From: Diplonema japonicum
Taxonomy: Eukaryota > Protista > Euglenozoa: Diplonemea
Assembly: GCA_964019335.1 (NCBI GenBank)
Contig: OZ025712.1
Coordinates: 372,001 to 436,000, forward strand
Length of the DNA: 64,000 nt
Direction of reading: 5' to 3'
The translations under genes and the position numbers were made by a program. A model generated the notes under the pieces. It saw only the letters and a list, made by a program, of their open reading frames with translations. It searched no databases and was not told the DNA's origin. Below, one piece after another: positions 26,371 through 27,215 of this stretch (position 1 is the first letter of the stretch; each line of letters opens with the position of its first letter).

Positions 26371-26488
26371 GGGGGTTGGGGTACACATAAAAAAAAAGAA
26401 CAACAACATGGTGTGAAGTATCCTGCGCTGTCCTCCTCGTGGTGGCCCCTGGGACCGCAGGCCAGGGAGGGCTGTGGTGCGAAAGCGC
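26371..26488 (+). ncRNA. HDV-like ribozyme (predicted, slightly imperfect P3)
   Basis: P1 GGGGGUU/GGCCCCU; P2 GCGCU/AGCGC; L3 UCCUCGU; GG for P1.1; P4 ACCGCAG/CUGUGGU; J4/2 gCGAA (C26480); J1/2 hairpin GGGGUAC/GUAUCCU. Confidence 0.65.
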
Positions 26489-27215
26489 GAAGGCGTGTCG
26501 GGGAGGGTGCTGGAGCGAAGTCGGCCTGTTTGGCACAAGCCGCTATCGGGGCACCGGTAGCGGGGGTGTAAGACCACTCAGACTCGGTCTGAGCAAAAGG
26601 CATTCTCTCCCATCGCGCGGCGTGTGCGTGGTTGCGTGCGGCGGTGACACCCACCGTTCCTGTTCATTCCACCAGCGTCGAGAGGCTGAGACCGATCTCG
26701 CGCACAGTGGAGGCCACAGGTTGTTCCCGGCGCCCTTGTAGCGTTGTCAGTCCTGCCCCAACTGAAAGGCCAGTCAGGACACAGGCTAACTGGGTACAGG
26801 TACTCGGACAACGGTGGGGTGAACAGGAGCGGTGGGTTGTGGCTGGTGTCGCTGGTGAGTGGCGTACGGTATGTTTGTGCTGGTTCCGCTGTGTCGTGGT
26901 GTGATGCGTGCGGCGGCGTCGCCCAGTGTTCCAGCGTACCCCATCCGAGAGACGTGAGGCTGAGACCGGTCTCGCGCGAAGTGGAGGCCACAGTGTTGAT
27001 CCCGGCGCCCTTCAGGCAATGACCGCCCTGTCGCAACTGGAAGGCCAGACAGATCGGTAGCCGAACTGGGTACAGACAAACGGATCGACGGTGGGGTGCA
27101 CGGGGACACTGGAAGAGAACTGGTTGCGGTGGAGGTGCTCTAGTCTGTCTGTGTGGCGTGTGCTGCTGGGTGCGAGGCGTGCTGTGCCGGGCCGGCAAGA
27201 AGTAGAAGTAGATTT
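26371..27215 (+). mobile_element. ~850-nt ribozyme-headed structured non-coding element (non-autonomous retroelement or lncRNA)
   Basis: 5' ribozyme, long G·U-rich stems, two homologous internal modules, 3' (AGAAGT)2 tail and a flanking AAACTT direct repeat. Confidence 0.55.

What the first reader, a model, noticed from the sequence alone, without database searches (positions are those of the whole stretch)
26371..27215. ~850-nt ribozyme-headed, highly structured non-coding RNA next to a tRNA pair
Seen: an HDV-like fold starts at G26371 on the plus strand, antisense to the gene cluster. The next ~730 nt are G/T-skewed and pair extensively with G·U wobbles. Examples are a 25-bp stem 26649-26673/26813-26837, CGGTGACAC/GTGTCGCTG, CATCGCGC/GTGTGATG, and CCAGTGTTCC..GTACCCCA/TGGGGTGC..GGGACACTGG. 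The unit ends in (AGAAGT)2 plus a T run and is flanked by AAACTT (26365-26370, 27216-27221). It has no credible ORF. Known: HDV-like ribozymes head R2, RTE and trypanosomatid L1Tc/ingi/SIDER elements. Inference: this is an undescribed non-autonomous retro-RNA, or a domesticated large ncRNA that releases itself by self-cleavage.
Basis: partly seen in the sequence, partly recalled or inferred. Interest (0 to 1): 0.9.

Follow-up and report, generated by a model that had tools for sequence, protein, structure and literature searches.

The report
Ribozyme-headed retroposon targeting tRNA gene upstreams
The stretch is the front two thirds of a 1.33-kb non-coding mobile element that probably cuts its own 5' end with an HDV-like ribozyme, borrows the 3' end of a 6.2-kb LINE, and inserts about 10-17 bp upstream of tRNA genes; this lifestyle is known from social amoebae and yeast, and I found no report of it for this euglenozoan lineage.

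Summary
It belongs to a dispersed 1,334-nt repeat, window 26371-27704.

- **Copies:** at least 10 full-length copies at 95-99% identity, plus 5'-truncated copies. All full-length copies start at G26371.
- **3' end:** the repeat ends in (TTA)n at 27704, not at 27215. AAACTT at 27216 is internal to every copy. The true target-site duplication is ATGCAAACTT (26361-26370 / 27705-27714).
- **Ribozyme:** a hand-built HDV descriptor hits once in 128 kb, exactly at G26371, with C26480 as catalytic C. Shuffles give 0.27 hits per 128 kb. L3 (UCCUCGU) and J4/2 (GCGAA) match my recalled HDV core. Rfam models do not detect it, and cleavage is untested.
- **Body:** two paralogous ~190-nt hairpins have 4 compensatory pairs and none broken of 53. 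Only the plus strand folds better than shuffles.
- **Partner:** the last ~460 nt are about 75% identical to the 3' UTR of a LINE encoding endonuclease, reverse transcriptase and RNase H. LINE copies begin with a diplonemid-type spliced leader.
- **Targeting:** 6 of 14 retroposon and 5 of 12 LINE 3' ends lie 10-17 nt upstream of a same-strand tRNA gene, and the tRNAs differ.

Verdict: a non-autonomous non-LTR retroposon, a new variant of known kinds. It is not a domesticated ncRNA.

The scan had already noted this same stretch (s1-861318, s1-861356). On other DNA of this genome it had noted other HDV-like ribozyme claims, but I found no note of this element family there.

The parts
26361..26370 (+). 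5' copy of the target-site duplication ATGCAAACTT
   Evidence: The same non-repetitive 10-mer follows the (TTA)n tail at 27705-27714. Other copies have their own 8-13-nt duplications.
26371..26491 (+). Candidate HDV-like self-cleaving ribozyme. It would cleave 5' of G26371, with C26480 as catalytic C and a 46-nt insert in J1/2.
   Evidence: It is the only descriptor hit in 128 kb, against 0.27 expected from shuffles. P1 starts exactly at the common 5' end of at least 10 copies. The two P4 variants seen among copies both keep pairing as C-G to U.G. There is no Rfam hit, and cleavage was not tested.
26492..26621 (+). Module shared with another repeat family, about 90% identical over 26505-26609
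   Evidence: Matches at L017-L020 and other loci. The block is missing from a related organism's contig, which joins 26491 to 26622.
26645..26841 (+). Long structured hairpin, unit A of an internal duplication with a period of about 275 nt
   Evidence: Repeat families D1-D6 and inverted repeat I1. Consensus fold with unit B: 53 pairs, 4 compensatory, 11 changed on one side, 0 broken.
26917..27114 (+). Long structured hairpin, unit B, paralogous to unit A
27244..27704 (+). 3' domain homologous to the 3' UTR of the partner LINE, ending in a (TTA)n tail
   Evidence: 74-75% identity to at least 25 LINE 3' ends over 27319-27704, and 82-85% over 27244-27294. The fold is shared, with 5 compensatory pairs; this alignment holds only the window copy, one LINE and one partial copy, several pairs are broken, and its covariation term is unfavourable (+4.75 kcal/mol), so the support is weak. 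The plus strand folds with z = -3.3.
27705..27714 (+). 3' copy of the target-site duplication ATGCAAACTT
27720..27792 (+). tRNA-Asn(GUU) gene, the insertion target. The element's tail ends 15 nt upstream of it, on the same strand.
   Evidence: ARAGORN and Rfam both call it. The same arrangement occurs at Gly, Ala, Leu, Met and Ile tRNA genes for other copies, and at Gly, Leu, Thr, Met and Phe tRNA genes for the LINE.

Best explanation
Window 26371-27704 is one copy of a 1,334-nt non-coding, non-autonomous non-LTR retroposon (SINE-like) in a euglenozoan genome with a diplonemid-type spliced leader.

Proposed life cycle:
1. The element is transcribed as part of a longer read-through RNA (inferred).
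2. The HDV-like ribozyme in its first ~120 nt cleaves just 5' of G26371 and sets the RNA's 5' end. This is inferred from the fold and from the identical 5' end of all full-length copies.
3. The ~460-nt 3' domain mimics the 3' UTR of a 6.2-kb LINE. That LINE has ORF1 plus an ORF2 with AP-endonuclease, reverse transcriptase and RNase H domains. The mimicry recruits the LINE's proteins in trans (inferred from homology).
4. Target-primed reverse transcription inserts the copy about 10-17 nt upstream of a tRNA gene, usually at an A-rich tract and in the tRNA's orientation. This leaves 8-13-bp target-site duplications and occasional 5' truncations (shown by copy comparison).
5. The G-rich middle holds two paralogous ~190-nt hairpins that are kept as RNA structure. 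Their role is unknown; RNA stability or protein binding is a guess.
For: - **Copies:** at least 10 full-length copies at 95-99% identity with an identical first base and unrelated upstream flanks, plus truncated copies starting at element positions 177, 231, 268, 410 and 436.
- **True 3' end:** the (TTA)n tail. There are 43 intact 3' ends genome-wide, 16 of the retroposon type and 27 of the LINE type.
- **Target-site duplications:** ATGCAAACTT in the window, and AAAAAAAGTC, AAAAAAATTGC, AAAAAAAATCAA and AAAATATG elsewhere.
- **tRNA genes:** a same-strand tRNA gene starts 10-17 nt after the tail in 6 of 14 retroposon and 5 of 12 LINE 3' ends, at different tRNA genes. Even assuming 1,600 tRNA genes, chance is about 3e-4 per insertion.
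- **Partner LINE:** Pfam finds Exo_endo_phos, RVT_1 and RNase_H in ORF2, and the nearest solved structure is L1 ORF2p. Its 3' UTR is 74-75% identical to 27319-27704 with a shared fold (a weak three-sequence alignment).
- **Ribozyme:** one descriptor hit in 128 kb, at the repeat boundary. L3 (UCCUCGU), the P1.1 GG and the GCGAA context of C26480 equal my recalled genomic HDV core.
- **Second family:** an unrelated abundant family in the same window has an HDV-like core that starts exactly at its own sharp boundary, on the minus strand at 7020.
- **Structure:** the body folds with z = -3.3 on the plus strand and -0.57 on the minus strand. The hairpin pairs covary.
Against: - No Rfam HDV-type model matches the window or the genome at E up to 10.
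- P3 has only two Watson-Crick pairs plus a U.U.
- The head's nested fold is not better than shuffles.
- The descriptor was written after seeing the sequence.
- All copies of the head are nearly identical, so there is almost no covariation within the family.
- No RNA run with raw reads was available, so neither transcription nor a 5' end at 26371 is shown.
- About half of the copies are not next to a recognisable tRNA or other Rfam pol III gene.
- The partner LINE itself has no ribozyme, so the origin of the head is unexplained.
Confidence: 0.75

Rival explanations
1. It is the same tRNA-targeted retroposon, but the HDV-like motif is inactive or coincidental. The common 5' end would then come from a transcription start at an internal promoter, or from another processing event.
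For: No Rfam HDV hit. P3 is weak, with two pairs plus a U.U. The head's nested fold has z = +0.33. There are no RNA end data. In trypanosomatid L1Tc the first 77 nt act as both promoter and ribozyme (PMC3185411), so a promoter function is plausible.
Against: The descriptor hits once in 128 kb, exactly at the boundary, against 0.27 expected per 128 kb. The L3, P1.1 and J4/2 residues match my recalled HDV core. A second family in the same window shows the same coincidence of core and boundary.
Confidence: 0.17
2. It is a domesticated large structured ncRNA gene that releases itself by self-cleavage and serves the cell.
For: Strong strand-specific structure with compensatory changes. Copies at 90-97% identity occur in related organisms.
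Against: There are 16 or more copies with target-site duplications, 5' truncations and degenerate members. The 3' end is borrowed from a LINE, and the copies sit at many different tRNA genes. This is the pattern of a mobile element, not of a gene.
Confidence: 0.04
3. It is a conserved upstream region of tRNA genes that spread with them by segmental duplication or gene conversion, not by retrotransposition.
For: Many copies lie upstream of tRNA genes in one orientation. L008 and L009 share their 5' flank and are 97.6% identical to the window copy, so they look like a segmental duplicate.
Against: The adjacent tRNA genes differ (Asn, Gly, Ala, Leu, Met, Ile). The flanks beyond the element are unrelated. 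Each copy has its own target-site duplication. 5'-truncated copies exist, and about half of the copies are not at tRNA genes.
Confidence: 0.03

Closest known systems
NARTc/L1Tc and RIME/ingi of trypanosomatids (Pr77 hallmark, L1TcRz ribozyme; PMC3185411, PMC4035085)
   Same: A euglenozoan non-LTR system in which a non-autonomous, non-coding element carries an HDV-like ribozyme at its very 5' end. That ribozyme frees the RNA from read-through transcripts.
   Different: - The core here is HDV/CPEB3-like, with a 2-bp P1.1, whereas Pr77 ribozymes have a 1-bp P1.1 and a divergent P1 (PMC3185411, PMC4035085).
- The partner LINE here does not share the head; its copies start with a spliced leader.
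- The tail is (TTA)n, not poly(A).
- Insertion is aimed at tRNA genes.
- Sequence similarity to Pr77 was not tested.
R2 SIDEs (non-autonomous R2 derivatives; PMC3414825)
   Same: The architecture is a 5' HDV-like ribozyme, a non-coding middle, and the 3' UTR of the autonomous partner used for target-primed reverse transcription at a specific target.
   Different: SIDEs arise by internal deletion of R2 and keep R2's own ribozyme. Here the first 845 nt have no similarity to the partner LINE, so the element is a chimera. The target is the upstream region of tRNA genes, not 28S rDNA, and the endonuclease is AP-type.
Dictyostelid tRNA-gene-targeted non-LTR elements (TRE5-A about 50 bp upstream; Dp_NLTR-A about 4 bp upstream, with RNase H; PMC5006619)
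   Same: AP-endonuclease-type non-LTR retrotransposons that integrate in a narrow window upstream of tRNA genes in a compact genome. Dp_NLTR-A also encodes RNase H.
   Different: The host lineage is Euglenozoa rather than Amoebozoa. The distance is about 10-17 nt. A non-autonomous ribozyme-headed partner exists. No sequence relationship was tested, so convergence is assumed.
Genomic HDV and CPEB3 ribozymes
   Same: A nested double-pseudoknot layout with G1.U at the cleavage site, L3 UCCUCGU, a two-pair P1.1, and the catalytic C in a GCGAA context. The comparison with HDV residues is from my own knowledge of the HDV sequence, not from a tool.
   Different: There is a 46-nt insert in J1/2. The third P3 pair is a U.U. 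Rfam RF00094 does not detect it.

Membership tests
HDV-like self-cleaving ribozyme | Nested double pseudoknot in the canonical order: P1 (7 bp), P2, P3, L3, P1.1, P4 | tested here: met
   The descriptor match at 26371-26489 has all helices in order. One deviation: P3 has two Watson-Crick pairs plus a U.U.
HDV-like self-cleaving ribozyme | Cleavage site immediately 5' of the first P1 nucleotide (G1, paired as G.U) | tested here: inconclusive
   G26371 pairs with T26450 as G.U, and it is the exact first base of all full-length copies. This is indirect; no RNA ends were available.
HDV-like self-cleaving ribozyme | Catalytic cytosine in J4/2 | tested here: met
   C26480 lies in GCGAA between P4 and P2'. 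It is conserved in 8 of 9 aligned heads; the ninth is a rearranged copy.
HDV-like self-cleaving ribozyme | Match to curated covariance models (Rfam RF00094 and related) | tested here: not met
   No hit at E up to 10 in 25500-30000, and none genome-wide for RF00094. The 46-nt J1/2 insert may explain this.
HDV-like self-cleaving ribozyme | Mg2+-dependent self-cleavage giving 5'-OH | not testable with these tools
   This needs an in vitro transcription and cleavage assay.
Non-autonomous non-LTR retroposon (SINE-like) | Dispersed copies with target-site duplications and 5' truncations | tested here: met
Non-autonomous non-LTR retroposon (SINE-like) | No coding capacity, and a 3' end shared with an autonomous LINE in the same genome | tested here: met
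   No Pfam hits for any ORF. The 3' 460 nt are 74-85% identical to the LINE 3' UTR, with the same (TTA)n tail. The LINE encodes endonuclease, reverse transcriptase and RNase H.
tRNA-gene-targeted retroelement | Insertions at a fixed distance and orientation relative to many different tRNA genes | tested here: met
   In 11 of 26 examined 3' ends the tail ends 10-17 nt upstream of a same-strand tRNA gene, with 11 different loci and at least 9 anticodons. The remaining copies are not at recognised pol III genes.
Trypanosomatid L1Tc/ingi clade (Pr77 hallmark) | Sequence homology of the first 77-79 nt to Pr77 | not tested
The structural features differ from those described in PMC3185411 and PMC4035085.

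The most novel reading that the evidence does not exclude
A LINE/SINE pair in a diplonemid-like euglenozoan has independently evolved pol III-gene targeting, inserting about 10-17 nt upstream of tRNA genes. The two partners define their RNA 5' ends in different ways: the LINE by spliced-leader trans-splicing, and the non-coding partner by a canonical HDV-type ribozyme. The duplicated ~190-nt covarying hairpins would be a new functional RNA module needed for mobilisation or RNA survival. I found no report of tRNA-targeted retroelements in Euglenozoa in the searched library.
Probability: 0.4. Interest if true: 0.7.

Novelty: new variant of a known kind. Interest (0 to 1): 0.55.

Why it matters
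- **Range of tRNA targeting.** It would extend tRNA-gene targeting by non-LTR retrotransposons, so far documented in dictyostelids, with LTR elements in yeasts, to Euglenozoa. That would be a further case of convergent "safe-haven" targeting.
- **A solution to a known problem.** In a genome with read-through or polycistronic transcription and no element-specific promoter, an element still needs a defined RNA 5' end. Here the coding element appears to be trans-spliced, while its non-coding parasite carries a ribozyme.
- **Testable material.** The ribozyme has a near-canonical HDV core with a large J1/2 insert and is easy to assay. The two covarying hairpins are candidate new RNA modules.
- **Annotation.** The family marks tRNA upstream regions and should not be called as genes or ncRNA loci.

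Tried and rejected
- **Rfam.** Gathering thresholds and E up to 10 on 25500-30000 gave only tRNAs and noise. RF00094 over the whole genome gave nothing.
- **Nested fold of the ribozyme head.** It is not better than shuffles. This is uninformative for a pseudoknot.
Both are rejected, because all copies continue past 27215.
- **ORFs of 100 aa or more that overlap the unit, on both strands.** No Pfam hits.
- **Similarity of the first 845 nt to the partner LINE, to a second LINE, or to the rest of the window.** None found.
- **Other families sharing the head.** None found by DNA search.
- **Metagenome scan with a motif conserved in both hairpins.** Three hits, each matching only 22-26 nt, so chance.
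- **RNA evidence.** No run on record as RNA holds the stretch. The four runs laid down are contigs from related organisms and cannot show ends or strand.
- **Non-tRNA copies.** No other pol III genes recognised next to them.
- **Organism identification via the protein atlas.** It gave no taxa. The spliced leader at the LINE 5' end is closest to the one listed diplonemid-type leader.
- **Pr77 sequence comparison.** Not done, for lack of a reference sequence.

Full report
**1. What is at the coordinates**

The window holds three tRNA genes: Asn 27720-27792 (+), Trp 27838-27910 (-) and Phe 29384-29456 (-). No other Rfam family reaches its threshold. A permissive Rfam scan of 25500-30000 (E up to 10) gives nothing inside 26371-27215.

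A repeat scan shows an internal tandem duplication with a period of about 275 nt, roughly 26633-26837 and 26905-27110.

**2.

Searching the window's own genome (62.5 Mb, 132 contigs) with 26371-27215 finds at least 10 full-length matches at 95-99% identity. It also finds matches that start at query positions 177, 231, 268, 410 and 436 and run to the end.

- All full-length copies begin with the same base, G26371 (GGGGGTTGGGG...). Their upstream flanks are unrelated.
- Downstream of 27215 every copy continues for about 490 nt and ends in (TTA)n.
- The AAACTT at 27216 is therefore internal and not a target-site duplication.
- The full element is 26371-27704, 1,334 nt.
- It is flanked by the non-repetitive 10-mer ATGCAAACTT at 26361-26370 and 27705-27714.
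- Other copies have their own 8-13-nt duplications, mostly an A-run plus specific bases: AAAAAAAGTC, AAAAAAATTGC, AAAAAAAATCAA and AAAATATG.
- An exact-pattern count of the 3' terminus gives 43 intact ends in the genome, 16 of this element's variant and 27 of a second variant.

Sharp 5' ends, 5' truncations, duplications and a simple-repeat tail are together the signature of target-primed reverse transcription.

**3. The autonomous partner**

The last ~386 nt (27319-27704) match at least 25 other loci at 74-75% identity. A further block, 27244-27294, matches at 82-85%. These loci are the 3' ends of a ~6.2-kb repeat.

- ORF1 is 449 aa.
- ORF2 is 1,441 aa and carries Exo_endo_phos, RVT_1 and RNase_H domains. 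Its reverse transcriptase is closest to human L1 ORF2p among solved structures.
- After the ORF2 stop come an internal A-run and then a ~540-nt structured 3' UTR ending in (TTA)n.
- The retroposon and LINE 3' domains share a predicted fold with 5 compensatory pairs. That alignment has only three sequences, one of them partial, several pairs are broken, and its covariation term is unfavourable, so this is weak support. The retroposon's 3' domain folds better than shuffles (z = -3.3).
- The first 845 nt of the element have no detectable similarity to this LINE, to a second poly(A)-tailed LINE next to it, or to the rest of the window.

The element is therefore a chimera of a unique head and body joined to a LINE-type tail.

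**4. Host**

Full-length LINE copies start, right after their target duplication, with a sequence whose 3' half is the kinetoplastid/diplonemid spliced-leader core ...CTACAGTTTCTGTACTTTATTG. That 22-mer occurs 214 times in the genome and 0 times for the reversed control.

The whole leader is closest to the single diplonemid-type leader listed in a compilation, "Euglenozoa 14" (PMC3795323). I therefore treat the genome as a euglenozoan, probably a diplonemid relative. This is an inference; no tool named the organism.

**5. tRNA-gene targeting**

ARAGORN on the fetched loci shows a same-strand tRNA gene starting 10-17 nt after the (TTA)n tail.

| Family | Fraction of 3' ends at a tRNA gene | tRNA genes |
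|---|---|---|
| Retroposon | 6 of 14 | Asn, Gly-CCC, Ala-CGC, Leu-AAG, Met, Ile-UAU |
| LINE | 5 of 12 | Gly-UCC, Leu-CAG, Thr-AGU, Met, Phe |

A third family with a (TTA)n tail sits the same way at another tRNA-Gly.

- In the window the duplication occupies -15 to -6 relative to tRNA-Asn.
- The genome search scored 63 tRNA genes out of about 1,600 rough candidates. Even with 1,600 genes, a 20-nt same-strand window covers about 3e-4 of the genome, so 11 of 26 is far beyond chance.
- The copies not at tRNA genes lie in A-rich sites, often the poly(A) tail of another retroelement. No other Rfam pol III gene is next to them.
- Several tRNA upstream regions carry stacks of elements. This is as expected if each new insertion lands between the previous one and the tRNA.

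**6. The ribozyme claim**

By hand the first 119 nt fit the HDV layout:

| Feature | Coordinates | Note |
|---|---|---|
| P1 | 26371-26377 / 26444-26450 | G1.U at its base |
| J1/2 | between P1 and P2 | 46-nt insert |
| P2 | 26424-26429 / 26484-26489 | |
| P3 | 26432-26433 / 26441-26442 | plus a U.U |
| L3 | 26434-26440 | UCCUCGU |
| P1.1 | C26435-C26436 with G26451-G26452 | |
| P4 | 26454-26460 / 26472-26478 | |
| J4/2 | around 26480 | GCGAA, C26480 as catalytic C |

L3, the GG of P1.1 and GCGAA are the residues I recall from the genomic HDV ribozyme. That comparison rests on my knowledge, not on a tool.

- A descriptor encoding this layout hits once in both strands of the window, at exactly these coordinates.
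- Sixty dinucleotide shuffles of the window give 0.27 hits per 128 kb. None of 20,000 shuffles of the local 150 nt gives any hit.
- The descriptor is post hoc. The independent test is that the predicted cleavage site equals the repeat's 5' end, which was found from other copies.
- Among copies, the only two substitutions inside helices both change a C-G pair in P4 to U.G.
- A relaxed descriptor finds a second HDV-like core on the minus strand at 7020-6898: P1 GGUGGUG/CAUCACC, P3 ACC/GGU, L3 UCCUCGUC, CGAA.
- That core lies in a very abundant unrelated family. All examined copies of that family start exactly at that G, with variable T-rich flanks.

Against the ribozyme:

- No Rfam hit.
- A weak P3.
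- The pseudoknot-free fold of the head is no better than shuffles (z = +0.33).
- No RNA data. All runs that hold the stretch are contigs, none is on record as RNA, and the four laid down cannot show ends or strand.

I rate an active ribozyme at about 0.7-0.75.

**7. The structured body**

- The stretch 26492-27215 folds at -337 kcal/mol against -314 +/- 7 for shuffles on the plus strand (z = -3.3, 0 of 20 shuffles as good).
- On the minus strand z is -0.57.
- 18% of the pairs are G.U, and the GC skew is +0.20.
- Units A (26645-26841) and B (26917-27114) share a consensus fold of 53 pairs. Four pairs changed on both sides, 11 on one side, and none is broken.
- Differences seen in a related organism's contig mostly keep pairing in the 25-bp stem (U.G to C-G, C-G to U.G, U.G to U-A). 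That table is truncated, so I do not count it as a test.
- The block 26505-26609 is about 90% identical to part of another repeat. It is absent from one related organism's version, so it is a separable module.

**8. Mechanism and comparison**

The best reading is a ribozyme-processed, LINE-mobilised, tRNA-upstream-targeted retroposon.

- It works like NARTc/RIME (PMC3185411, PMC4035085) and like R2 SIDEs (PMC3414825) at the RNA level.
- It works like dictyostelid TRE5 and NLTR-A at the targeting level (PMC5006619).
- It differs from each in its chimeric origin, its near-canonical HDV core, its (TTA)n tail, and a partner that uses a spliced leader instead of a ribozyme.
- Literature searches found no tRNA-targeted element described in Euglenozoa. 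That is absence in the searched library only.

**9. Verdict**

- The find is a solid new mobile-element variant rather than a new class of RNA.

Noticed in passing
window 6674-7044 (minus strand; core 7020-6898): A very abundant ~325-nt repeat (about 1,470 first-look candidates) has an HDV-like core on the minus strand: P1 GGUGGUG/CAUCACC, L3 UCCUCGUC, CGAA. P1 starts exactly at the family's sharp boundary. In that orientation the element ends in a variable-length T-run and sits in T-rich targets.
   Followed up: partly
L062:2759-2795 (G000:C20): Full-length copies of the 6.2-kb LINE begin with a complete diplonemid-type spliced leader, followed by 9 nt, an A-run and the ORF1 start codon. The template RNA was therefore trans-spliced. 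Other copies start just after the leader. The leader's 22-nt core occurs 214 times dispersed over the genome, many near contig ends.
   Followed up: partly
L062:8404-8441: The LINE has an internal ~40-nt A-run between the ORF2 stop codon and its structured (TTA)n-ended 3' UTR. This looks as if a poly(A)-tailed ancestor acquired a new 3' module.
   Followed up: no
L062:1-2751; also the upstream flanks of L003, L005, L008 and L009: A second LINE family has an RNase H domain and a poly(A) tail, ending ...GGTATTTTG(A)n. It often lies immediately upstream of the retroposon or the (TTA)n LINE, forming stacks of elements in front of tRNA genes. A poly(A)-tailed element also ends about 11 nt upstream of a tRNA-Ser (L050).
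   Followed up: partly
L017:1446-2496, L018, L019, L020: A ~1-kb repeat unit is joined to a truncated 3' end of the poly(A) LINE. It shares the 105-nt block 26505-26609 with the retroposon at about 90% identity. Its nature was not determined.
   Followed up: no
L062:8990-9070: Directly downstream of one LINE copy lies a tRNA-like sequence with D-arm and T-arm motifs. Neither ARAGORN nor Rfam calls it. It may be a degenerate or intron-bearing tRNA gene that served as the target.
   Followed up: no
I did not examine it.
   Followed up: no
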